Virus record (IMG/VR): IMGVR_UViG_3300044633_000899 | Span: 232,331 to 296,330 of that record | Strand: one strand, 5' to 3' | Length of the DNA stretch: 64,000 nt | Part shown: positions 6,424 to 52,326 of the stretch, one piece after another | Position numbering within the stretch: the first letter of the stretch is position 1 | Layout of the letters: the number at the start of each line of letters is the position of its first letter | Notes under the pieces: model-generated | Seen by the model: the letters and a program-made list of their open reading frames with translations, nothing else | Told to the model about the DNA's origin: nothing | The model's database searches: none | Translations under genes and position numbers: made by a program

Positions 6424-6870
6424 TTAACCGATTACCATTAATTTTGGGTTGTAGTTTCTAACTGGGTTTGCGTCACTTATGTTAAACGTTTTGTCTAACC
6501 ACACTTTTATAATTGATTCTGTTTGTTCTGGTGTTAATTTAAAAAAATTTTCTAACACCATCCAAAATTCAGAATTGTTAATAAACATTTTTTTTGTCAA
6601 TAGATTAAAAACTATCAAATTGTCATTTGGTTTTTTGCGAAACAACATTAAATTAGATGATGTTTTACTTATAACCGTTTCTAAATCGTTATACAAATTT
6701 AAAAACTCAAACGGATTGTTGTCAAACCCTTTTGATATGATTGTGTCAATACTATTAAAATATATTAATTTATTCCACCCCTCATTTTTAATCTTATTTT
6801 GGATGATTTCTTTTTCACTTAAAGATTCATTTAATCTTTTGTACTGACTTTCGGATATAATAATTTTCAT
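6424..6870 (-). CDS. Variable-tail family protein, divergent member
   Basis: MKIIISESQYK leader; PFEFLNLYNDL matches the family motif PMDFLNLFNDL; WLD..FN motif followed by a tail of the same length ending IG. Confidence 0.85.
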   Translation of the reverse strand: MKIIISESQYKRLNESLSEKEIIQNKIKNEGWNKLIYFNSIDTIISKGFDNNPFEFLNLYNDLETVISKTSSNLMLFRKKPNDNLIVFNLLTKKMFINNSEFWMVLENFFKLTPEQTESIIKVWLDKTFNISDANPVRNYNPKLMVIG

Positions 6871-6874
6871 ATTG

Positions 6875-6881
6875 ATAAATA
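6875..6881 (-). promoter_or_regulatory. TATTTAT motif, putative late promoter (representative copy; about 22 copies upstream of genes)
   Basis: Coding-strand TATTTAT at 6401, 6875, 7346, 7832, 9391, 9875, 10346 (minus) and 12149, 13773, 15616, 21049, 23028, 35179, 38178, 41494, 46346, 47862, 48988, 51303, 51990, 52422, 61599 (plus), about 4-40 nt before start codons, mainly of structural genes. Confidence 0.7.
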
Positions 6882-6891
6882 TTCTATTTTT

Positions 6892-7341
6892 TCAATTTGT
6901 AGACCTCATCCAATTGTCATCAACACCAATTATCAATGGTATGACATCCCTTAAATTGTGGGTCAACCATTTCTGTATAAGTTTCTGTATATTAGTGTAG
7001 TTAAGACCAAAGTTACCTTCCAAAACTGACCAAATTTCATTATAATTAATATAAACCTCATCACTTTCTCTATCGTGAATGATAAAATTATGACCTTTTT
7101 TAAAACGATATAATGTCCAATATTCTTCTTCTTCACTCTGAACCGATTCCAGATCATTAAATAAGTTTAAGAAATCCATTGGTTCTTTAATGTCAAAAAT
7201 TTCAAGAGTTTTATCCAAGGACCCAACAATCTTTGTTACAGATTCAAAACCAACCTTTTTTATTAAACCCAATAATTTTTCTTTTAAAGAAACGTTTTCT
7301 TTAATTAGTTTGTATTGACTTTCGGTGATGATAATTTTCAT
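6892..7341 (-). CDS. Variable-tail family protein
   Basis: 149 aa, family core PMDFLNLFNDLESVQSEE; ends in the second repeat copy read as WMRSTN*. Confidence 0.9.
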   Translation of the reverse strand: MKIIITESQYKLIKENVSLKEKLLGLIKKVGFESVTKIVGSLDKTLEIFDIKEPMDFLNLFNDLESVQSEEEEYWTLYRFKKGHNFIIHDRESDEVYINYNEIWSVLEGNFGLNYTNIQKLIQKWLTHNLRDVIPLIIGVDDNWMRSTN

Positions 7342-7377
7342 ATTGATAAATATTCTAATTTTTTTAAATTGTAGATA

Positions 7378-7827
7378 TCATTCAATTTTTCCAATTACTT
7401 CCGTGCTGTTTGCGTAGATTCTGACTCCCCTTAAATTGTAGACCTCACCCAACCATATCTCTATAATTTTCTGTCTTTCAGAAAATTTAAGACCAAATTT
7501 ATCTTCCAATACTGACCAAATTTCATCAGAATTGATATAAACAGAATCATTTTTTCTATCGTAAACCATAAAGTTATGACCTTTTCTATAACGATACAAT
7601 GTCCAATTTTCATCTTCCTCACTCTGAACCGATTCCAAATCATTAAATAAATTTAAGAAATCCATCGGTTCTTTGACATCAAAGATTTCAAATGTTTTAT
7701 CCAAAGATCCAACAATCTTTGTTACAGATTTAAAACCAACTTTTTTTATTAAACCCAACAATTTTTCCTTTAAAGAAACGTTTTCTTTGATTAGTTTGTA
7801 TTGACTTTCGGATATAATAATTTTCAT
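7378..7827 (-). CDS. Variable-tail family protein
   Basis: 149 aa, family core; WLGEVYNLRGVR plus unique tail IYANSTEVIGKIE*. Confidence 0.9.
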   Translation of the reverse strand: MKIIISESQYKLIKENVSLKEKLLGLIKKVGFKSVTKIVGSLDKTFEIFDVKEPMDFLNLFNDLESVQSEEDENWTLYRYRKGHNFMVYDRKNDSVYINSDEIWSVLEDKFGLKFSERQKIIEIWLGEVYNLRGVRIYANSTEVIGKIE

Positions 7828-9423: not shown

Positions 9424-9870
9424 TTAAATCATAGATATCATCCAATCCCAATTCTGAAAGTTCTCAAAAACCCAAGTCGGTCTGGTTCTCTTTAAATTGT
9501 AGGTATCATCCAACCAATCCTTAATAAGGTTACTTATATCATAATAGTTTGTTAAATGTTTCTGTTCTAAAACTGACCAAATGTCACCATAATTGATATA
9601 AACAGCATCACTTCTTCTGTCGTGAATCATAATGTTATAACCTTTTTTATAACGATATAATGTCCAAGATGGTCTTTCCTCACTCTGAATTACATCCAAT
9701 TCATTAAATAAATTTAAGAAATCCATCGGTTCTTTGATATCCAAAATTTCAAGTGTTTTATCCAAGGATCCAACAATTTTTGTTGTGGACTTAAAACCAA
9801 TTTTTTTAACTAAACCTAGTAATTTTTCTTTAATCGATTTATATTGATTTTCGGTTATAATAATTTTCAT
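9424..9870 (-). CDS. Variable-tail family protein
   Basis: 148 aa, family core; WLDDTYNLKRTR plus unique tail ending WMISMI*. Confidence 0.9.
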   Translation of the reverse strand: MKIIITENQYKSIKEKLLGLVKKIGFKSTTKIVGSLDKTLEILDIKEPMDFLNLFNELDVIQSEERPSWTLYRYKKGYNIMIHDRRSDAVYINYGDIWSVLEQKHLTNYYDISNLIKDWLDDTYNLKRTRPTWVFENFQNWDWMISMI

Positions 9871-9891
9871 ATTGATAAATATTTCACTTTT

Positions 9892-10341
9892 TTAAATTGT
9901 GGTGTTGTGTATACCAACAATATGGTTATACGTTGTGATTCCCTTTAAATCATAGACCTCATCCAACCACGTTTCTACAAGGGTTGTAATGTCACCAAAG
10001 TTAATATCAAAATTATCTTCCAAAATTGTCCATATTTCGTCATAATTAATGAAAACATATTTAATTTTTCTATCGTAAATCATAAAATTATGACCTTTTT
10101 TATATCTATACAATACCCAATTTGGTTCTTCTTCACTCTGAACAACATCCAAATCATTAAATAAGTTCAAGAAATCCATTGGTTCTTTAATATCAAAGAT
10201 ATCAAAAGTTTTATCCAAAGACCCAACAACTCTTATCGTTGATTCAAATCCAACCTTTTTGATTAAACTCAATAATTTTTCTTTTAAAGAAACGTTTTCT
10301 TTGATTAGTTTGTATTGACTTTCGGTTATTATTATTCGCAT
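9892..10341 (-). CDS. Variable-tail family protein
   Basis: 149 aa, family core; WLDEVYDLKGIT plus unique tail TYNHIVGIHNTTI*. Confidence 0.9.
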   Translation of the reverse strand: MRIIITESQYKLIKENVSLKEKLLSLIKKVGFESTIRVVGSLDKTFDIFDIKEPMDFLNLFNDLDVVQSEEEPNWVLYRYKKGHNFMIYDRKIKYVFINYDEIWTILEDNFDINFGDITTLVETWLDEVYDLKGITTYNHIVGIHNTTI

Positions 10342-13794: not shown

Positions 13795-14211
13795 ATGAAA
13801 AAAATTTTAAGACTAACAGAAAACGATTTAACCCGTATCGTTAAACGAGTTATTCGTGAACAAGATGGTGAATCACATAATAAAATATCAGATGAAGATT
13901 TTGATTCTTTTTTAGATGTTTTATCACAATATGAATCAGGTGACATTACTTGGGATGACTTTTTAGAAAAAAGTGAAGCTATTGGTTCAAAATATGTGGT
14001 TGGACCAAAACCAAAATCAAACGTTTTTATTGGGTTGTCTAATCAAGTTGAAGAGTTTAATCAAAAGTTGTCAAACCATTATGATGACCTAATTAGAAAT
14101 TCTACGTTATTTGGTAATATTTATGATGCTTACGAATCTGGTGAATTAACTAACGATGAAGGGTTCACTCTATTGAAAATGATCCGTACGGTAGAATATA
14201 ACGACCGTTAA
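13795..14211 (+). CDS. Acidic protein with LTExDLxRIVxRVIxE leader, putative internal head protein
   Basis: MKKILRLTENDLTRIVKRVIREQ N-terminus shared with 47881 and 52024; own TATTTAT motif at 13773. Confidence 0.75.
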   Translation: MKKILRLTENDLTRIVKRVIREQDGESHNKISDEDFDSFLDVLSQYESGDITWDDFLEKSEAIGSKYVVGPKPKSNVFIGLSNQVEEFNQKLSNHYDDLIRNSTLFGNIYDAYESGELTNDEGFTLLKMIRTVEYNDR

Positions 14212-43881: not shown

Positions 43882-46299
43882 ATGTCACTAAAAATAATTA
43901 AACGAGATGGGGAGATCGTATCATTTAATCCCCAAAAAATATACAACAGAATTAAAAAATCCGCTAAAGGGTTAAATGTTAACTCTGATGAAATCTTTAT
44001 TAAAGTAATTACATCTGTACCAACAGAAGGTGAAGTAACAACAAAGGAGTTGGACAAGTTGGTATATGAGATTGCTGCGGCGTATACAGGTAGTCACCAC
44101 GACTACTCAAGGTTAGCGGCAACGGTTGCAATATCATCATATCACAAAGAAACAAACCCTAGTTTTACACAAACAATGTTTGAACTTTATGAAGAAGGTA
44201 TTATTAACGATATACTAATTGAAACAATTAAAGAGTATGGTGAAGAAAATATTGACGCAATAATTGAACACGAAAACGATTATAACTTTGATTATTTTGC
44301 TTGGAGATCGTTACAAGAAATGTATTTATTAAAAAAATCAAACGGTAAAACGATTGAAAGACCTCAACATATGTATATGCGTGTTGCATTGTGGACAACC
44401 AATACTTTTGAAGAGGCTGTTGATTATTATAAATCATTGTCAAAACAATTAATTTCCAAAGCAACACCAATTATGATTAATTCTGGAACAAAAGTTCCTC
44501 AATTAGCATCGTGTGTATTACATTATAATAATGCGGATTCAAGACAAGGTCTTTTGGATACATTGACAGATATCTCAACGTTTTCATCTGATGCCGCGGG
44601 GATTGGATTAGCAATGTCTAATATCCGAAGTAAAGAAAGTAGAATATCAACATCTGGTGGTTATGCTGGTGGTTTATTGAAATACCTTAAAATTGTTAAT
44701 GAATCATTAAGATTTTTTAACCAACAAGGTCGTAGACCAGGATCCGCGGCAATTTATTTAGAACCTTGGCATAAGGACATTATTGATTTATTGGAAATCA
44801 AGAAAAACACAGGAGCTGAAGAACTAAGAGCCCGTGATCTATTCACAGCGCTTTGGATACCAGATAATTTTATGGAAGCGGTTAAGAACAATGGTGACTG
44901 GTATTTATTTTGTCCAAGTGATATTATTAAATCTGGGTTAAAACCACTACAAGATACTTATGGTGATGAATATGAAACAAACTATAATAAGGCGGTTAGT
45001 TTAGGTTTAGGTAAAAAAGTTAAGGCACAAGATATATGGTCAAAAATCATTGAATCACAAGTTGAAACTGGTGTTCCTTATTTATGTGCTAAGGATAGTG
45101 CTAATAAAAAAACCAACCATCAAAACATTGGGGTTCTTAAACAATCCAACCTCTGCTCCGAAATTTTCCAAACGACGGATGAGGCAACCACCGCGATTTG
45201 CAGTCTATCATCAATAGTTATAAAGAATTTTATACAAGGGGGTAAATTTAATCACGAGTTATTATTCCAAGAGGTTAGAAAGGTTGTGAGATCGTTAAAT
45301 AAAGTAATTGATATAAACAACTACTCAACAGAAAAGGGTAGAAAGGGTGGTCTAGAACAACGAGCAATTGCTATTGGTGTACAAGGACTTGCGGATGTTT
45401 TTTACTTAATGGATTATATCTTCACATCAGAAGAAGCAAAACGACTTAATAAAGAAATATTTGAAACGATATACTATGGTGCGATTTACGAAAGTAATCA
45501 ACTATGTATTGAGGGTAAATATAAACCATATGACTATTTTGATGGGTCACCGATGTCACAAGGTGTGTTTCAATTTGATATGTGGGGGTTAAATGAGGGT
45601 AGTTTATTTTGGGATTGGTCAACATTAAAAGAAAACGTTATTAAACACGGTATTTGTAACTCACTATTTACTGCTCAGATGCCAGTAGCCTCGTCGGCAA
45701 AAATTACCGGTTCATATGAAATGACAGAACCAGCACATTCCGCAATATTTAATAGACGTGTTGTTGGGGGTGAAATTACGATTGTTAACAAGTATTTAAT
45801 TAATGATTTTGAAAAAATTGGAATATGGTGTGAGGATTTAAAGAATGAAATTATTATGAACGAAGGTTCAGTCCAAAATATCAATTTTAATAATTACCTT
45901 GATCCAGAAGATAAAAATTATATTAAAAAGGTAAAAAGAATTGAACATCTAATACCAAAATATAAAACAATCTGGGAGATATCACAAAAACAACTTATTG
46001 ATATGGCAACAGATAGAGCGCCTTTTATTGATCAATCACAATCAATGAATATCTATATGGCAGACCCAACACTATCAAAAATCACATCATCACATTTTCA
46101 TTCTTGGGAAAGTGGTTTAAAAACATTGTGTTATTATGTTAGAACAAAGGCTATCTCAACTGGGGCGAAACATTTGGCTGTAGACATTACAAAAAGAGAA
46201 ACACCAAAACAGGAACAACCAAAAATAAATTATACAAATATTAATTTACCACCAAAACCCGAAAATTCTGACTTTGAATGTTTTGGATGTTCATCATAA
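43882..46299 (+). CDS. nrdA: Class Ia ribonucleotide reductase alpha subunit with ATP cone
   Basis: N-terminal ATP cone (IIKRDG), QLASC, SNLCSEI, MPVASS, YYVR, C-terminal CFGC. Confidence 0.96.
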   Translation: MSLKIIKRDGEIVSFNPQKIYNRIKKSAKGLNVNSDEIFIKVITSVPTEGEVTTKELDKLVYEIAAAYTGSHHDYSRLAATVAISSYHKETNPSFTQTMFELYEEGIINDILIETIKEYGEENIDAIIEHENDYNFDYFAWRSLQEMYLLKKSNGKTIERPQHMYMRVALWTTNTFEEAVDYYKSLSKQLISKATPIMINSGTKVPQLASCVLHYNNADSRQGLLDTLTDISTFSSDAAGIGLAMSNIRSKESRISTSGGYAGGLLKYLKIVNESLRFFNQQGRRPGSAAIYLEPWHKDIIDLLEIKKNTGAEELRARDLFTALWIPDNFMEAVKNNGDWYLFCPSDIIKSGLKPLQDTYGDEYETNYNKAVSLGLGKKVKAQDIWSKIIESQVETGVPYLCAKDSANKKTNHQNIGVLKQSNLCSEIFQTTDEATTAICSLSSIVIKNFIQGGKFNHELLFQEVRKVVRSLNKVIDINNYSTEKGRKGGLEQRAIAIGVQGLADVFYLMDYIFTSEEAKRLNKEIFETIYYGAIYESNQLCIEGKYKPYDYFDGSPMSQGVFQFDMWGLNEGSLFWDWSTLKENVIKHGICNSLFTAQMPVASSAKITGSYEMTEPAHSAIFNRRVVGGEITIVNKYLINDFEKIGIWCEDLKNEIIMNEGSVQNINFNNYLDPEDKNYIKKVKRIEHLIPKYKTIWEISQKQLIDMATDRAPFIDQSQSMNIYMADPTLSKITSSHFHSWESGLKTLCYYVRTKAISTGAKHLAVDITKRETPKQEQPKINYTNINLPPKPENSDFECFGCSS

Positions 46300-46304
46300 A
46301 ATAT

Positions 46305-46333
46305 AAAAAACCACTAATTAGTGGTTTTTTTTT
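46305..46333. terminator. Palindromic (bidirectional-type) terminator
   Basis: AAAAAACCACTAATTAGTGGTTTTTT is a perfect palindrome. Confidence 0.75.
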
Positions 46334-46364
46334 GTTATAACGATATATTTATAAATAAAAAATT

Positions 46365-47051
46365 ATGAAATTAATTATTACAGAAGAAGAAAAAAATAGA
46401 ATACTTGGTATGCACCAATCGGCAACCTCAAGACAGTATTTAAAGGAAAATACGGGATATGATAGTTCTGGTGGTGCGCCAATAAATGATGGGTCTGGTG
46501 CTTATAATTATTTTATGGGTTTAATAAAAAAAACTGGAAAATTAGATAAAAACACTGCTTGGCTCGGTAAAACGACATATTGGATTGTAACACAACCTTG
46601 GCAAGAAGGAACCGGTACCATTCCTGGAAATTTTGCTTATTTAACAATGAGAGGAATTGTGAAGAGAAATGGTCTTTATTTTGACGTTTCAAATGATAAT
46701 GAATCTATCACAACATTCAAGTTAGGAAAAACAAATGCTGATTCATTTTTGATTGCCGAAACAGCAAATGAAGTTGAAAATTGGTTACCAAACACACAAA
46801 CATTAAAATCACTAGGTGCGGGAACTCCAGGTGGAAATATGGGACTTGTAGGTGGTTTAACAAATTTTAAATCAATGGTTAAAAATTTACCTAATAAGGA
46901 CCTTTTATTAAAAAATTATGTTAATGCGTCAGCTCAACCTAATTTTAAAAATGCAGTACCACAAGATCAGATGGATTTATACACAACATCCGCAACATCC
47001 GTTAAACCAGCAACATCCGTTAAACCAGCAACACCAACAAAACCACAATAA
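46365..47051 (+). CDS. Protein with ITEEEK..RILGMH leader and C-terminal ATPTKP tag
   Basis: Leader shared with 47058; ends SATSVKPATSVKPATPTKPQ*. Confidence 0.75.
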   Translation: MKLIITEEEKNRILGMHQSATSRQYLKENTGYDSSGGAPINDGSGAYNYFMGLIKKTGKLDKNTAWLGKTTYWIVTQPWQEGTGTIPGNFAYLTMRGIVKRNGLYFDVSNDNESITTFKLGKTNADSFLIAETANEVENWLPNTQTLKSLGAGTPGGNMGLVGGLTNFKSMVKNLPNKDLLLKNYVNASAQPNFKNAVPQDQMDLYTTSATSVKPATSVKPATPTKPQ

Positions 47052-47057
47052 AAAATA

Positions 47058-47846
47058 ATGAAAAAATTCTTAATAACAGAAGAAGAAAAATCAAGAATAC
47101 TTGGTATGCACAAAAGTGCAATTGCTAGAGAATTTTTAGGTGAACAAGGAACTCCAGCAGTACCAACAGGTACACAACCAGCACAACAACCAGCAACTCC
47201 AGTAGTCGCGCCGGTAGCCGCAGGAACACAACCAGCACAACAACCGAATCCAACATTGGATCGTTTAAATCAACTTATGGGTACGTCATTACCTCAAAAC
47301 GCAAGAAACGAAGACGTAATTAATGCGTATAAAACATATTTGGGTACAGATATTAATGGTATGGTTGGTAAAACGATTGTTGTGTTTAAAAACGCAAACA
47401 CAGCAAACCCAACAATTTTAGGTTCTACAATTGCTTCTGAATTTATTATTGGATCATTATACTTTAATGGTACTAATACAACCTGGGTTTGGAAAACACC
47501 AATTAAAACTAACTTTAATGAAAGTGACCAAGAGAATAATTACACCGTTACAGATGGCGTTAACGCAATAAGAAAGGGTGTAAGTTTATTCACATTACAA
47601 GGTGGTGCAGTTACAGACTTACAAAACATTGGTTTAGTAAAACAAAGACTAACACCACTTGTTGGTACTTTTGGTATGGTAGCAAAAAATCAGACACCAT
47701 ACTCAAGTTGGGTAACTAAAGCGAACCCACAAAATACAGACACAGGATTTTTTACTATAACACCATTTATTGCCGGCACTGGATCACAATTATCATCAAC
47801 GATTACACCGATTGCGGCAACACCAGCAACACCAACAAAACCATAA
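47058..47846 (+). CDS. Protein with ITEEEK..RILGMH leader, Pro/Gln-rich linker and C-terminal ATPTKP tag
   Basis: Leader shared with 46365; GTQPAQQP twice; ends ATPATPTKP*. Confidence 0.75.
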   Translation: MKKFLITEEEKSRILGMHKSAIAREFLGEQGTPAVPTGTQPAQQPATPVVAPVAAGTQPAQQPNPTLDRLNQLMGTSLPQNARNEDVINAYKTYLGTDINGMVGKTIVVFKNANTANPTILGSTIASEFIIGSLYFNGTNTTWVWKTPIKTNFNESDQENNYTVTDGVNAIRKGVSLFTLQGGAVTDLQNIGLVKQRLTPLVGTFGMVAKNQTPYSSWVTKANPQNTDTGFFTITPFIAGTGSQLSSTITPIAATPATPTKP

Positions 47847-47880
47847 AAATAAACAATAATATATTTATAAATAAAAAACA

Positions 47881-48375
47881 ATGAAAAAAATAATTAGATT
47901 AACAGAATCAGATCTTACAAGAATTGTAAGACGTGTGATTAAAGAACAAGGTGTTAGAACTCTTGTACCATTAACAATTTCGGTACCATTTAGAAAAGAC
48001 TCAACAGGTCAAATGGTTTTTGACCCAAATTATCAAGTTAAAATTTTTGCAAAGAATGGTGAAGGGACAGAACAAACTAGTTTGGAAAACTACACAAAAA
48101 TTGTAGGTCTCCAAATAACAAGTGAGTATTTTGTGAATCCAGTTACTAAAAAAGATGCTGCAGGAAATATCGTAGGTTCTTTCTCAATCGGAAATCAAAA
48201 AAACCTTGGAACTTACTTGAAAAACCAAGTAGGAAAAACAACACCTTTTTCGGATCAAAGTATTTCAATAACTATAGGTCAAGTACCTTCTGGTTCAACA
48301 ATAGTATACGGTGGTGGAACAAAATTTGTAATGTACGACACTGGTGCTAAAGTAGCAACACCAACAAAACCATAA
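47881..48375 (+). CDS. Protein with LTExDLxRIV leader and C-terminal ATPTKP tag
   Basis: MKKIIRLTESDLTRIVRRVIKEQ; ends KVATPTKP*. Confidence 0.75.
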   Translation: MKKIIRLTESDLTRIVRRVIKEQGVRTLVPLTISVPFRKDSTGQMVFDPNYQVKIFAKNGEGTEQTSLENYTKIVGLQITSEYFVNPVTKKDAAGNIVGSFSIGNQKNLGTYLKNQVGKTTPFSDQSISITIGQVPSGSTIVYGGGTKFVMYDTGAKVATPTKP

Positions 48376-48379
48376 TAAA

Positions 48380-48405
48380 AAAAACCCATCTTTTGATGGG
48401 TTTTT
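48380..48405. terminator. Bidirectional terminator between convergent genes
   Basis: AAAAACCCATC-tttt-GATGGGTTTTT. Confidence 0.85.
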
Positions 48406-48409
48406 CATT

Positions 48410-48826
48410 TTAAGAACCTTTTACAATTATAAAGTCTGAGAATTTGGTTAACTCAATAAAATTATCTGTGTTTGAAAACCAAGTTACTTGTTCGTTATCA
48501 ATATCGGTATTAATAACCATCCAGATGTTATATTCGTCAATTAAAAACTTAACTAAGATAACACCATCTTTATCATCAAAGGTAATTTCACCCTCACTCA
48601 AAACAATGTTGTTTTTGATGTGTGTGAATGACTTGTTTGTTAAATCAATGTTATATGTACTATTAACTTTTCTATATTCATAAACTAAACTGTCGTCATT
48701 AATAAGATTAAAAACACTGGTGTCATAACCATATGTGTCAATAACACCTGACACCTCAATTTTAATAACTTGTGAATTAACAGAAGTTGTAAATAACAGA
48801 CATAAAATAAAAATAATTGTTTTCAT
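48410..48826 (-). CDS. Exported beta-rich protein with Sec signal peptide
   Basis: MKTIIFILCLLFTTSVNS|Q signal peptide with Gln at +1; TATCTTTG (-7 type) motif upstream at 48856-48863. Confidence 0.7.
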   Translation of the reverse strand: MKTIIFILCLLFTTSVNSQVIKIEVSGVIDTYGYDTSVFNLINDDSLVYEYRKVNSTYNIDLTNKSFTHIKNNIVLSEGEITFDDKDGVILVKFLIDEYNIWMVINTDIDNEQVTWFSNTDNFIELTKFSDFIIVKGS

Positions 48827-48999
48827 AATGTTTGGGTTTTAAATTATTAATACATCAAAGATATATATATTACTAAAACAAACGTAAATTTTAACATTTT
48901 TTAACAATTTGTCTTTTATATAAATATTTGAGAATGTTCCAGAACACAACAACATCTTTTTTCTTTATATAAAACAACCAACCATTATATTTATTAAAT

Positions 49000-51313: not shown

Positions 51314-51832
51314 ATGAAAATAATTATAACCGAAAATCAATACAAGTTAATTAAAGAAAACATTTCTTTAAAAGAAAAATTAAAGGACTTAATCAAAAAG
51401 GTTGGTTTTGAATCAATGGTAAGAGTTGTTGGATCCTTGGATAAAACGTTTGAAATCTTTGATGTCAAAGAACCGATGGATTTCTTAAATTTATTTAATG
51501 ATTTGGAATCGGTTCAGAGTGAAGAACGTGAAGATTGGACGTTATATCGTTATAAAAAAGGACATAATTTTATAGTTTACAATAGAAAAAATGATTATGT
51601 TCATATCAATTATGATGAAATTTGGTCAGTTTTAGAAGACAATTTTGGACTTAACTACTCTGAAACACAGAAACTTACAAAGAGATGGTTGGATGAGGTC
51701 TACAATTTAAGGGGAGTCACACCTTATATTTTTGACTTAACATCAACAGGGTTAAGGTTGGATGAGGTCTACAATTTAAGGGGAGTCACACCTCGCGAAA
51801 ATATATCGTTCGATATGTCTCGGATTGGATGA
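51314..51832 (+). CDS. Variable-tail family protein with duplicated tail unit
   Basis: 172 aa; family core; ...WLDEVYNLRGVT-PYIFDLTSTGLR-LDEVYNLRGVT-PRENISFDMSR-IG*. Confidence 0.9.
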   Translation: MKIIITENQYKLIKENISLKEKLKDLIKKVGFESMVRVVGSLDKTFEIFDVKEPMDFLNLFNDLESVQSEEREDWTLYRYKKGHNFIVYNRKNDYVHINYDEIWSVLEDNFGLNYSETQKLTKRWLDEVYNLRGVTPYIFDLTSTGLRLDEVYNLRGVTPRENISFDMSRIG

Positions 51833-52023: not shown

Positions 52024-52326
52024 ATGAAAAAAACAGTTAGATTAACAGAAAGAGATTTAACAAGAATTGTTAAAAGAGTAATTAAAGAAGGTAGTGAAAA
52101 CATTGAAGATTTACGACACGAAAGATTAGACCTACTAAAAAGAATTAAAAGATTTGCAAACAAATCTTATAATTTAGAAAACACGGTAGATATTGATTTA
52201 GAAAACACGGTAGATATGGATGATGACGATATGTATGGTGTTGGTGAATGTGTTGAAACTGCAGACGAACTGCTCAAAGCCTTGAAAAGAATTGGTGAAG
52301 ATCACGATATTAACGATTTTGAATAA
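52024..52326 (+). CDS. Acidic protein with LTExDLxRIV leader
   Basis: MKKTVRLTERDLTRIVKRVIKEG; internal 24-bp duplication (LENTVDID/LENTVDMD). Confidence 0.75.
   Translation: MKKTVRLTERDLTRIVKRVIKEGSENIEDLRHERLDLLKRIKRFANKSYNLENTVDIDLENTVDMDDDDMYGVGECVETADELLKALKRIGEDHDINDFE

What the first reader, a model, noticed from the sequence alone, without database searches (positions are those of the whole stretch)
46365..48375. Three unrelated leader-bearing proteins share a C-terminal ATPTKP tag
Seen: ...PATPTKPQ*, ...PATPTKP*, ...VATPTKP*, with 19 identical bases (AGCAACACCAACAAAACCA, ending at 47045, 47843 and 48372). The central domains show no similarity and two different leader types are used. 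Inference: cassettes built as leader + payload + tag. The tag is either a second sorting/ejection or modification signal, or the DNA is a recombination anchor for payload swapping, paralleling the repeat-bounded tails of the other family.
Basis: partly seen in the sequence, partly recalled or inferred. Interest (0 to 1): 0.7.

Follow-up and report, generated by a model that had tools for sequence, protein, structure and literature searches.

The report
Shared C-terminal tail on phage cassettes
Three unrelated small proteins of an uncultivated T4-like giant phage of Bacteroidota carry the same N-terminal leader type and end in the same six residues (ATPTKP), and related phages show this tail is a conserved protein motif on freely swapped gene cassettes whose reader is still unknown.

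Summary
Three adjacent ORFs (46365-47051, 47058-47846, 47881-48375) end in ATPTKP(Q), with a 19-nt exact match in all three (0 expected by chance). Their central domains show no sequence or profile similarity.

The window is the end of a 296-kb T4-like jumbo phage genome with a gp21-type prohead protease and a gp23-like capsid protein. Related viral contigs carry the same locus (RNR | cassettes | convergent 138-aa exported-protein gene | gp25/gp6) with different numbers and kinds of cassettes. Payloads are replaced between a constant leader and a constant tail, and one payload occurs behind four different leaders.

- **Spread:** at least 13 BLAST-unlinked payload clusters carry the tail.
- **Selection:** tail codons drift only synonymously.
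- **Lineage:** the motif follows the genome, not the payload (TPTKP, TPQKP, PVKKP, QKPGAKQ, PTQK) and is uniform within an array.

The tail is therefore a protein-level motif (consensus P-x-K-P at the C-terminus) and not only a DNA anchor, although it is also the 3' homology edge of the swaps.

Leaders end in L/I-x-E, the T4 prohead-protease motif, which suggests T4 internal-protein-like packaging. The only genomic candidate is the always-adjacent 138-aa exported protein (complex prediction: weak support). I rate this a new variant of a known kind, of moderately high interest.

The parts
46305..46330 (.). Bidirectional stem-loop terminator after the RNR large-subunit gene; upstream border of the cassette array
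   Evidence: 11-pair stem followed by a T run, on both strands
46344..46352 (+). Promoter-like motif TATATTTAT 13 nt upstream of the first cassette
   Evidence: 26 of 46 genome copies lie within 45 nt upstream of same-strand gene starts, including the gp25-like baseplate wedge gene and many leader genes
46365..47051 (+). Cassette 1 (P0001, 228 aa): leader A (aa 1-28, ends YLKE), alpha/beta payload, disordered tail with 18-nt repeats (46992-47045), tail codons ATPTKP 47028-47045, then Q and stop
47058..47846 (+). Cassette 2 (P0002, 262 aa): leader A (aa 1-30, ends FLGE), Pro/Thr/Ala/Gln-rich linker (aa 31-65), payload, tail codons ATPTKP 47826-47843; probably co-transcribed with cassette 1
47860..47868 (+). 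Second copy of the TATATTTAT promoter-like motif, 13 nt upstream of cassette 3
47881..48375 (+). Cassette 3 (P0003, 164 aa): leader B (aa 1-23, ends VIKE), beta-sandwich payload (aa 30-153, pLDDT >90), disordered tail, tail codons ATPTKP 48355-48372
48379..48406 (.). Stem-loop terminator shared by the array and the convergent 138-aa gene
   Evidence: conserved in relatives (downstream sequences)
48410..48826 (-). 138-aa protein with a Sec signal peptide and invariant Gln after the predicted cleavage site (VNS|Q). It is always encoded convergently next to the tailed cassette(s), also where the flanks differ. Candidate reader of the tail.
   Evidence: linkage in 19+ loci, down to 32% identity; complex with P0003: weak support, 0.52 against best control 0.00; no Pfam or PHROG hit

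Best explanation
The three genes form a hyperplastic array of modular cassettes in an uncultivated T4-like jumbo phage that probably infects Bacteroidota. Each cassette encodes three parts:

1. A 23-30-residue amphipathic N-terminal leader that ends in L/I-x-E. This is most likely a prohead (capsid)-targeting propeptide removed by the phage's gp21-type protease, as in the T4 internal proteins. INFERRED.
2. A globular payload unrelated to its neighbours. SHOWN.
3. A disordered Thr/Pro-rich tail ending in P-x-K-P at the C-terminus (here ATPTKP). SHOWN.

The tail is a short linear protein motif kept by selection on the amino acids. SHOWN: only synonymous drift, and the motif is retained across 13 payload clusters and distant phages. 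Its variant follows the genome and is the same on every cassette of an array. The simplest reading is that all payloads of an array are addressed to one shared, co-evolving partner. INFERRED.

The best genomic candidate for that partner is the exported 138-aa protein encoded convergently beside the array. INFERRED, weak support.

Because leader and tail are the only sequences shared by cassettes, they are also the borders between which payloads are exchanged among strains. SHOWN as borders; whether crossovers occur there is NOT shown.
For: **Genome context**
- 296-kb virus record with a Peptidase_S77 (gp21) homologue at 78.9 bits and phrog_207 at E 7e-43, a gp23-like capsid protein at 213.8 bits, and a portal.
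- The T4 protease cleaves after L/I-x-E, and T4 internal proteins share only a capsid targeting sequence on diverse payloads (PMC9026906, PMC3012670).
- 84 of 85 leader proteins have [LI]-x-E at the leader/payload border, against about 0.21 expected per protein.
- About 18-20 leader ORFs occur in the genome, and only these three carry the tail.

**Modularity**
- The same payload sits behind four leader types.
- The array differs in each relative, and every cassette ends in TPTKP.
- Breakpoints fall at 46370/47030, 47949/48343 and 48357.

**Protein-level constraint**
- Codon table.
- Tail variants in the P0001 family are TPIKP, TPQKP, PVSKP and PVKKP.
- There are 13 payload clusters, and tails track the genome: L052 has 2x QKPGAKQ, L058 has 3x PTQK.
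- The tail is predicted disordered.

**Partner candidate**
- Linkage of 138-like genes with tailed cassettes is conserved in changed flanks (L052, L056, L060, L074-76).
- Complex prediction scored 0.52 (runs 0.61/0.52/0.51) against a best control of 0.00. Contacts agreed in at least 87% and partner pLDDT was at least 79. The verdict was 'weak support'; that mark was reached by 58 of 80 solved complexes and 2 of 110 mismatches, and scores at or below 0.60 are more often wrong than right without a good prior.
- Some leader proteins carry LysM or PG_binding_1 domains without a signal peptide, so at least some act at the cell wall, as virion-delivered proteins would.
Against: - No experiment or proteome exists. 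No isolate in the phage collection carries these proteins.
- Cleavage of the leader and packaging are inferred from a 3-residue motif that is itself part of the conserved leader, so the 84/85 count is not made of independent cases.
- The 138-aa protein is predicted to be exported while the cassettes have no signal peptide, so binding needs the cassettes to reach the periplasm.
- The complex score is weak, no interface was reported, and it cannot be said that the tail is in the interface.
- One 138-like gene (L071) sits beside a leader gene without the tail, and the PTQK arrays (L058, L059) show no 138-like gene on their short contigs.
- All relatives are metagenomic and related, so tail/partner co-variation is not independent of phylogeny.
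- Within this genome the three tails are DNA-identical (P about 1.6e-4 under codon usage), which also fits recent gene conversion.
Confidence: 0.5

Rival explanations
1. The tail matters as DNA only. The 18-19-nt block, with the leader at the other end, is a recombination anchor that lets payloads be exchanged, and the peptide is a by-product.
For: - Every swap, insertion or deletion between strains has a border at the tail or at a leader.
- The extra cassette in L008 is bounded by the tail on both sides.
- The three tails in this genome are identical in DNA beyond codon bias (P about 1.6e-4).
- The tail sits in slippage-prone 9/18-nt repeats.
- T4-type phages shuffle modules through short conserved cassettes, the PeSLs (PMC2839356).
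Against: - Synonymous sites in the tail drift at about the rate of the rest of the gene while the amino acids stay fixed.
- Other arrays carry tails that differ in DNA within one genome: L008 has ACT, ACT, ACC..CCT and ACA.
- Distant lineages changed the DNA completely but kept P-x-K-P at the very C-terminus.
- Homology must resume at the tail in any alignment, wherever the crossover was.
- 18 nt is short for homologous recombination (own knowledge).
Confidence: 0.15
2. The tail is a capsid-interior or DNA-contact peptide: a second head signal. It would work either like an encapsulin C-terminal cargo-loading peptide docking on the HK97-fold shell, or like an S/TPxK minor-groove motif that ties the protein to the AT-rich DNA so that it leaves with it.
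For: - A short conserved C-terminal peptide after a flexible linker on unrelated cargo is the encapsulin arrangement (PMC7925596).
- The phage has an HK97-fold gp23-like capsid protein.
- Leaders suggest head targeting.
- The tail often comes as 2-3 tandem xTPxKP units.
- The genome is 30% GC.
Against: - No similarity to known encapsulin peptide motifs, and no shell gene nearby.
- Only one Lys per unit, which is weak for DNA binding (own knowledge).
- It does not explain why the tail is restricted to cassettes next to the 138-aa gene while 15 or more other leader proteins lack it.
Confidence: 0.15
3. The tail is a modification or stability signal. It could be O-glycosylation or phosphorylation of the Thr in T-P-x-K, modification of the Lys, or a proline cap that protects a disordered end from carboxypeptidases.
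For: - Thr/Pro-rich and disordered.
- T-P-x-K resembles proline-directed kinase sites, and Thr/Pro-rich ends resemble O-glycosylated tails (own knowledge, not tested).
- The terminal Pro is almost invariant in the TPTKP, QKP and KKP groups.
Against: - No modifying enzyme was found linked to the array.
- The PTQK and QKPGAKQ variants end in K or Q, not P.
- It does not predict uniformity within an array or linkage to the 138-aa gene.
Confidence: 0.1
4. The tail has no function. It is a low-complexity linker remnant carried along by repeated duplication and recombination of cassettes.
For: - Pro/Thr/Ala-rich linkers are common in this protein family, for example after leaders.
- TPT occurs 75 times in the proteome.
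- The relatives are closely related.
Against: - The motif sits exactly at the C-terminus in 13 payload clusters.
- At least five inferred changes are all synonymous. Chance is about 0.29^5 = 0.002 by hand count of synonymous single-base changes, assuming independence.
- The motif persists in phages whose 138-like protein is only 32-38% identical.
Confidence: 0.1

Closest known systems
T4 internal proteins (IPI, IPII, IPIII, Alt) with their capsid targeting sequence, in the hypervariable IP locus of T-even phages
   Same: - A conserved short N-terminal leader on otherwise unrelated, fast-turning-over payloads.
- The leader ends in the L/I-x-E motif of a gp21-type prohead protease, which this phage encodes.
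- Gene content varies between strains.
   Different: - The leader is 23-30 residues, not 10, and comes in at least four related or swapped types.
- About 20 leader genes are scattered through the genome.
- A second conserved element at the C-terminus has no counterpart in T4 internal proteins (Alt is merely trimmed at its C-terminus).
- Packaging and cleavage have not been shown here.
Encapsulin cargo-loading (targeting) peptides
   Same: A short conserved C-terminal peptide after a flexible linker marks unrelated cargo proteins for one common HK97-fold-related destination.
   Different: - The motif is different.
- There is no encapsulin shell gene.
- The cassettes also carry an N-terminal leader.
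- The linked conserved gene is a small exported protein, not a shell.
[quoted passage not shown]
   Same: Short conserved elements flank non-essential ORFan genes in hyperplastic regions and coincide with insertion, deletion and replacement borders between close strains. Here, terminator plus promoter motifs flank the array.
   Different: - The conserved borders are inside the coding sequence (leader and tail) and are constrained as protein.
- The promoter motif is shared with a baseplate gene rather than being an early sigma-70 type.
Polymorphic toxin / CDI 'orphan' cassette arrays
   Same: A constant trafficking part, a variable part delimited by a short conserved peptide motif that doubles as recombination homology, and arrays of alternative modules.
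   Different: - The neighbouring gene does not vary with the payload, so it is not a cognate immunity gene.
- No toxin domain was detected.
- The conserved motif is at the extreme C-terminus.

Membership tests
T4-type internal (capsid-targeted) proteins | The phage encodes a gp21-type (Peptidase_S77) prohead protease and a gp23-type capsid | tested here: met
   PF03420 at 78.9 bits; phrog_207 at E 6.9e-43; PF07068 at 213.8 bits
T4-type internal (capsid-targeted) proteins | A conserved N-terminal leader on unrelated payloads, ending in the protease motif L/I-x-E | tested here: met
   Only the leaders align between families. 84 of 85 leader proteins have [LI]-x-E at the border. The motif is described in PMC9026906.
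T4-type internal (capsid-targeted) proteins | The protein is found inside the head, with the leader removed | not testable with these tools
   There is no isolate and no proteome. No related isolate is in the phage collection.
T4-type internal (capsid-targeted) proteins | Sequence similarity of the leader to the T4 capsid targeting sequence | not tested
   No T4 sequence was fetched. Pfam and PHROGs gave no family for the cassettes.
Encapsulin cargo with C-terminal targeting peptide | A short conserved C-terminal peptide after a disordered linker on unrelated cargo | tested here: met
Encapsulin cargo with C-terminal targeting peptide | An encapsulin shell gene in the same operon | tested here: not met
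   The neighbours are RNR, a 138-aa exported protein and gp25/gp6.
PeSL-mediated modular shuffling | A composite promoter plus stem-loop element at the borders of strain-specific insertions or replacements | tested here: inconclusive
   A terminator at 46305-46330 plus a promoter-like motif at 46344 flank the array, and one break lies at 46370. Most borders, however, are inside coding leaders and tails.
Bacteroidota T9SS cargo (C-terminal domain signal) | An N-terminal Sec signal peptide and a folded C-terminal domain of about 70-100 aa | tested here: not met
   The leaders are charged amphipathic helices, and the tail is 6-20 disordered residues.
Type IV pilins / pseudopilins | A class III signal peptide with a hydrophobic N-terminal helix, and a pilin fold | tested here: not met
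   The best fold hits are pilins but lie in the noise range: Z 6.7 and 6.4 for P0003, Z 3.4 or less for P0001, Foldseek TM about 0.3. The leader is not hydrophobic.
Polymorphic toxin cassette arrays | An adjacent immunity gene that varies with the variable domain | tested here: not met
   The 138-aa neighbour stays 83-99% identical while the adjacent payload changes.

The most novel reading that the evidence does not exclude
A two-address system in which virion-packaged proteins carry both a cleavable N-terminal capsid-targeting leader and a C-terminal P-x-K-P peptide. The peptide is read by a phage-encoded exported periplasmic protein (the 138-aa neighbour). Possible roles are a kin-specific superinfection-exclusion or sorting device that captures ejected proteins in the periplasm, with tail and reader co-evolving by lineage.
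Probability: 0.12. Interest if true: 0.85.

Novelty: new variant of a known kind. Interest (0 to 1): 0.62.

Why it matters
- **A rule for annotation.** Leader-plus-payload cassettes extend the T4 internal-protein principle to an uncultivated clade of Bacteroidota jumbo phages. They give a simple sequence rule (leader ending in L/I-x-E) for predicting which of many ORFan proteins are delivered with the virion.
- **A directly testable motif.** A second, C-terminal address shared by unrelated payloads, uniform within an array and varying by lineage, has not to my knowledge been described for phage proteins. It offers a peptide-partner pair to test, and if it is a sorting signal, a six-residue tag for loading foreign proteins.
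- **A clean natural example.** The locus shows payload exchange between fixed coding borders among closely related strains.

Tried and rejected
- **Family searches:** Pfam and PHROGs on the three proteins, four further payloads and the 138-aa protein gave nothing above threshold.
- **Isolate phages:** blastn and tblastn against isolate phages found no match for the locus or for P0002/P0003.
- **Fold searches on the P0003 model:** PDB, BFVD and AFDB clusters gave no hit with E <= 0.001 and TM < 0.4. VIA-align's best hits were archaeal pilins at Z 6.7 and 6.4, below the tool's noise level of 7-8.
- **Fold search on the P0001 model:** best Z was 3.4.
- **ESM Atlas:** the P0002 model is poor (pLDDT 0.37). 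The 138-aa protein gave only leads below 0.9, lipocalin-like or NlpE-like.
- **Rfam** on the region found nothing near the gathering scores.
- **T4 late promoter TATAAATA:** present upstream of cassettes 1 and 3 but not enriched genome-wide (137 seen, about 129 expected), so it was dropped as evidence. The longer TATATTTAT motif was used instead.
- **Sigma-70-type scan** found no excess over shuffles.
- **Diverged-paralogue idea:** not supported by phmmer, hhalign or the two models.
- **Complex prediction** of the 138-aa protein with P0003 gave only 'weak support'. I use it as a lead, not as evidence of binding.
Full report
**1. The observation**

The region holds three same-strand ORFs: 46365-47051 (P0001, 228 aa), 47058-47846 (P0002, 262 aa) and 47881-48375 (P0003, 164 aa). 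They end in PATPTKPQ, PATPTKP and VATPTKP. The 19-mer occurs exactly three times in the window, with none expected in shuffles. TPTKP occurs nowhere else in the proteome of the 296-kb genome. Given the peptide and genome codon usage, identical codons in all three copies have P about 1.6e-4.

phmmer finds only leader matches between the three proteins. Profile-profile comparison of the three families, built from 18, 10 and 11 homologues, again aligns only the leaders. That comparison also shows that leader 'A' (ITEEEKxRILGMH...YLxE) and leader 'B' (RLTESDLTRIVRRVIKE) are related variants of one leader (88-89% probability). The tail lies in micro-tandem repeats: 18-nt units giving ATSVKP-ATSVKP-ATPTKP in P0001, and 9-nt units giving ATP-ATP-TKP in P0002.

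**2. Where we are**

The window is the last 64 kb of a single-contig 296,330-bp virus record at 30% GC, which CheckV rates as complete. The record encodes:
- a gp21-type prohead protease (PF03420 at 78.9 bits; phrog_207 at E 7e-43);
- a gp23-like major capsid protein (213.8 bits);
- a portal;
- gp25/gp6-like baseplate wedge proteins.

The nearest isolates are only distant Flavobacterium myophages. Exported proteins of this phage and its relatives have Gln right after the predicted signal-peptide cleavage site. This is the Bacteroidetes 'Q-rule' (PMC5837995; sequences) and fits a Bacteroidota host.

The array lies between a stem-loop terminator after the RNR large-subunit gene (46305-46330) and a second terminator (48379-48406) shared with a convergent 138-aa gene (48410-48826). 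Cassettes 1 and 3 are each preceded at 13 nt by the motif TATATTTAT. Of the genome's 46 copies of this motif, 26 lie within 45 nt upstream of gene starts on the same strand, including the gp25-like gene and many leader genes. I read it as a phage promoter shared with a structural gene (inference). The T4 late consensus TATAAATA is also present but is not enriched in this AT-rich genome, so I do not use it.

**3. Relatives show modular cassettes**

A scan of viral contigs for A-T-P-T-K-P-stop, plus look-ups of homologues, recovered the syntenic locus in many related metagenomic phages.

| Locus | Cassettes, in order |
|---|---|
| window, L006 | A-P0001, A-P0002, B-P0003 |
| L008, L040 | A-P0001, A-P0002, D-P0003, B-new (185 aa) |
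| L014 | B-new (175 aa), A-P0002, B-P0003 |
| L022 | A-P0001, A-P0002, B-P0033 |
| L024, L026, L051 | A-P0002, B-new (146 aa) |
| L063, L065 | A-P0002 only |
| L001 (more distant) | A-P0003-like only |

Every one of these cassettes ends in TPTKP(Q). The P0003 payload occurs behind leader B, leader A (P0006, P0086), a third leader (MKNTLAENLLRFGVKNL; P0007, P0008) and a fourth (MNKSYSKLRHIQEAN; L008).

blastn of the window against the relatives places the homology breaks at the module borders:
- L014 breaks at 46371-47029, running from the gene start to the first base of the tail block.
- L022 breaks at 47950-48342, running from leader end to tail.
- L024 has the same payload break, plus a deletion between the two A leaders.
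- L008 has an extra cassette, with the tail present at both of its borders.

So 'leader + payload + tail' is a real unit of exchange.

**4. Protein tag or DNA anchor?**

- **Codons.** Across about 20 cassettes of the TPTKP group, the last five codons read ACA CCA AC[A/T/C] AAA CC[A/T]. Every difference is synonymous.
- **Rate.** The genes as a whole are 85-92% identical in DNA between these strains. The tail DNA therefore drifts at roughly the gene's rate, but only at silent sites.
- **Event count.** At least five independent changes are needed: one each in the P0001 and P0002 lineages and three in P0003. With 13 of 45 possible single-base changes silent, all five being silent has a chance of about 0.002. 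This is a hand calculation that assumes independence.
- **Within one genome.** Tails can differ in DNA within a genome, as in L008, so gene conversion is not what keeps the peptide. The triple DNA identity in this window is the exception among five arrays.
- **Further out.** The DNA changes completely but a C-terminal P-x-K-P stays: TPIKP, TPQKP, PVSKP and PVKKP in P0001 homologues; PVKKP and PTKKP in phages whose 138-like protein is only 32-38% identical; and a P-x-Q-K variant in another branch.
- **Payload diversity.** Clustering the tail-bearing proteins by payload gives 13 BLAST-unlinked clusters. Some may be distant relatives; for example, P0033 is borderline to the P0003 family.
- **Tail follows the genome.** The tail variant follows the genome, not the payload. 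Two unrelated payloads in L052 both end in QKPGAKQ, three in L058 end in PTQK, and homologous payloads in different genomes carry different tails.

This is what one expects of a peptide read by one partner per phage. The DNA-anchor idea survives only as a side effect. The tail is where homology resumes in every swap, but that would be seen wherever the crossover occurred, because the tail is the only sequence shared at 3' ends.

**5. What the leader suggests**

About 18-20 ORFs of this genome carry the leader, and only the three at this locus have the tail. In 84 of 85 leader proteins collected, an [LI]-x-E site marks the leader/payload border, mostly followed by Gln. Chance expectation is about 0.21 per protein, though these cases are not independent because the motif is part of the conserved leader.

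T4 gp21 cleaves after L/I-x-E. The T4 internal proteins are diverse payloads that share only a short capsid targeting sequence which brings them into the prohead core (PMC9026906, PMC3012670).

The AlphaFold models show the leader as a separate low-confidence helix, the payload as a compact domain and the tail as disordered. The P0003 model has pLDDT 83 overall and above 90 in the payload. The P0001 model has pLDDT 60.

Some leader proteins carry peptidoglycan-binding modules but no signal peptide: LysM in P0046 at 34.5 bits, and PG_binding_1 in a 593-aa protein of this genome at 48.9 bits. This fits proteins delivered by the virion to the cell envelope.

A large paralogous family with a similar MKIIITE... 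N-terminus has one copy between the portal and the prohead protease. All of this is circumstantial. Neither cleavage nor packaging has been shown.

**6. The conserved neighbour**

A 138-aa protein with a Sec signal peptide (invariant S-Q at the predicted cleavage site) is encoded convergently right after the last tailed cassette. This holds in the window and in every TPTKP-, QKP-, KKP- and PSKN-type locus examined. It also holds in loci with different flanks (L052, L056, L074-76) and in a distant phage with the third leader (L060). In L074, L075, L076 and L052 a leader gene on the other side of the 138-like gene lacks the tail, while the convergent one has it.

The neighbour stays 83-99% identical while the adjacent payload changes. 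It therefore cannot be a payload-specific partner such as an immunity protein. If it reads anything, it reads the constant parts.

A complex prediction of its mature part with P0003 (payload + tail) gave 'weak support':
- median score 0.52 (runs 0.61, 0.52, 0.51) against a best control of 0.00;
- contacts agreeing in at least 87%, with partner pLDDT at least 79;
- the pass mark was reached by 58 of 80 solved complexes and 2 of 110 mismatches, but passes at or below 0.60 are more often wrong than right unless the prior is good;
- no interface was reported.

Exceptions are L071, where the convergent leader gene has no tail, and the PTQK arrays L058 and L059, whose short contigs hold no 138-like gene. 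The 138-aa protein has no Pfam or PHROG family. Atlas leads (lipocalin-like, NlpE-like) score below the level that means anything.

**7. Payloads**

No payload has a recognisable family. The P0003 payload is a beta-sandwich. Its best structural neighbours are archaeal type IV pilins (Z 6.7 and 6.4), and P0001's are pseudopilins (Z 3.4 or less). Both lie within the tool's noise range, and the leaders are not hydrophobic pilin helices. I do not build on this.

**8. Verdict**

*Shown:*
- a modular leader-payload-tail architecture, with payload exchange between strains at this locus;
- a tail constrained as protein, uniform within arrays and varying by lineage;
- tight linkage to an exported 138-aa protein gene.

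*Inferred:*
- leaders are gp21-cleaved head-targeting propeptides, as in T4 internal proteins (about 0.5-0.6);
- the tail docks the payloads on one shared partner (about 0.45);
- that partner is the 138-aa protein (about 0.25).

*Rivals:* a DNA anchor only, a capsid- or DNA-contact peptide, a modification or stability signal, and a functionless remnant. These are set out with their tests in the Rival explanations section.

The finding is a new variant of a known kind: T4-type capsid-targeted cassettes, with an added C-terminal address that I have not seen described.

Noticed in passing
window 43882-46299; L008 6068-9780, L026 1457-5463, L051 7603-10271: The RNR large-subunit gene is intact in the window. 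In several close relatives it is split by an inserted 385-aa ORF (starts MRYYVYILLD, looks like a homing endonuclease), with the downstream part starting in an intein- or intron-like way. This is a strain-variable mobile insertion right next to the cassette array.
   Followed up: no
window 6424-7827, 9424-10341, 51314-51832; genome 166712-167158 and others: A large paralogous family (at least 12 copies, about 148 aa) starts MKIIITE[NS]QYKLIKEN. One copy lies between the portal and the prohead protease, and two are fused to longer proteins.
   Followed up: partly
window 13795-14211 and 52024-52326: Two further leader-B ORFs (138 and 100 aa) in the window lack the P-x-K-P tail. Both are preceded by the TATATTTAT motif.
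   Followed up: partly
genome 112660-114441 (L077): A 593-aa leader-bearing protein has a C-terminal PG_binding_1 domain (48.9 bits) and no signal peptide. A metagenomic leader-A protein (P0046) carries LysM.
   Followed up: partly
genome 162873-165968 (L087): The portal gene (1031 aa) has HNH-endonuclease matches at residues 229-412, ahead of the portal domain. This may be an inserted or fused homing endonuclease or intein.
   Followed up: no
L008 3942-4484 (minus strand): A chimeric leader: a fourth leader type (MNKSYSKLRHIQEAN...) is joined to the last residues of leader B (RVIKEQGVRT) in front of the P0003 payload. This places a recombination joint inside the leader.
   Followed up: partly
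window about 48856-48863 (minus strand), upstream of the 138-aa gene: TATCTTTG fits the Bacteroidota -7 promoter element TAnnTTTG (own knowledge). The exported neighbour may therefore be transcribed by host RNA polymerase, earlier than the cassettes.
   Followed up: no
L052 2941-3681 and 9606-11822: A related phage contig encodes a rhomboid-family protease and a ClpB-like AAA+ protein near its tailed cassettes.
   Followed up: no
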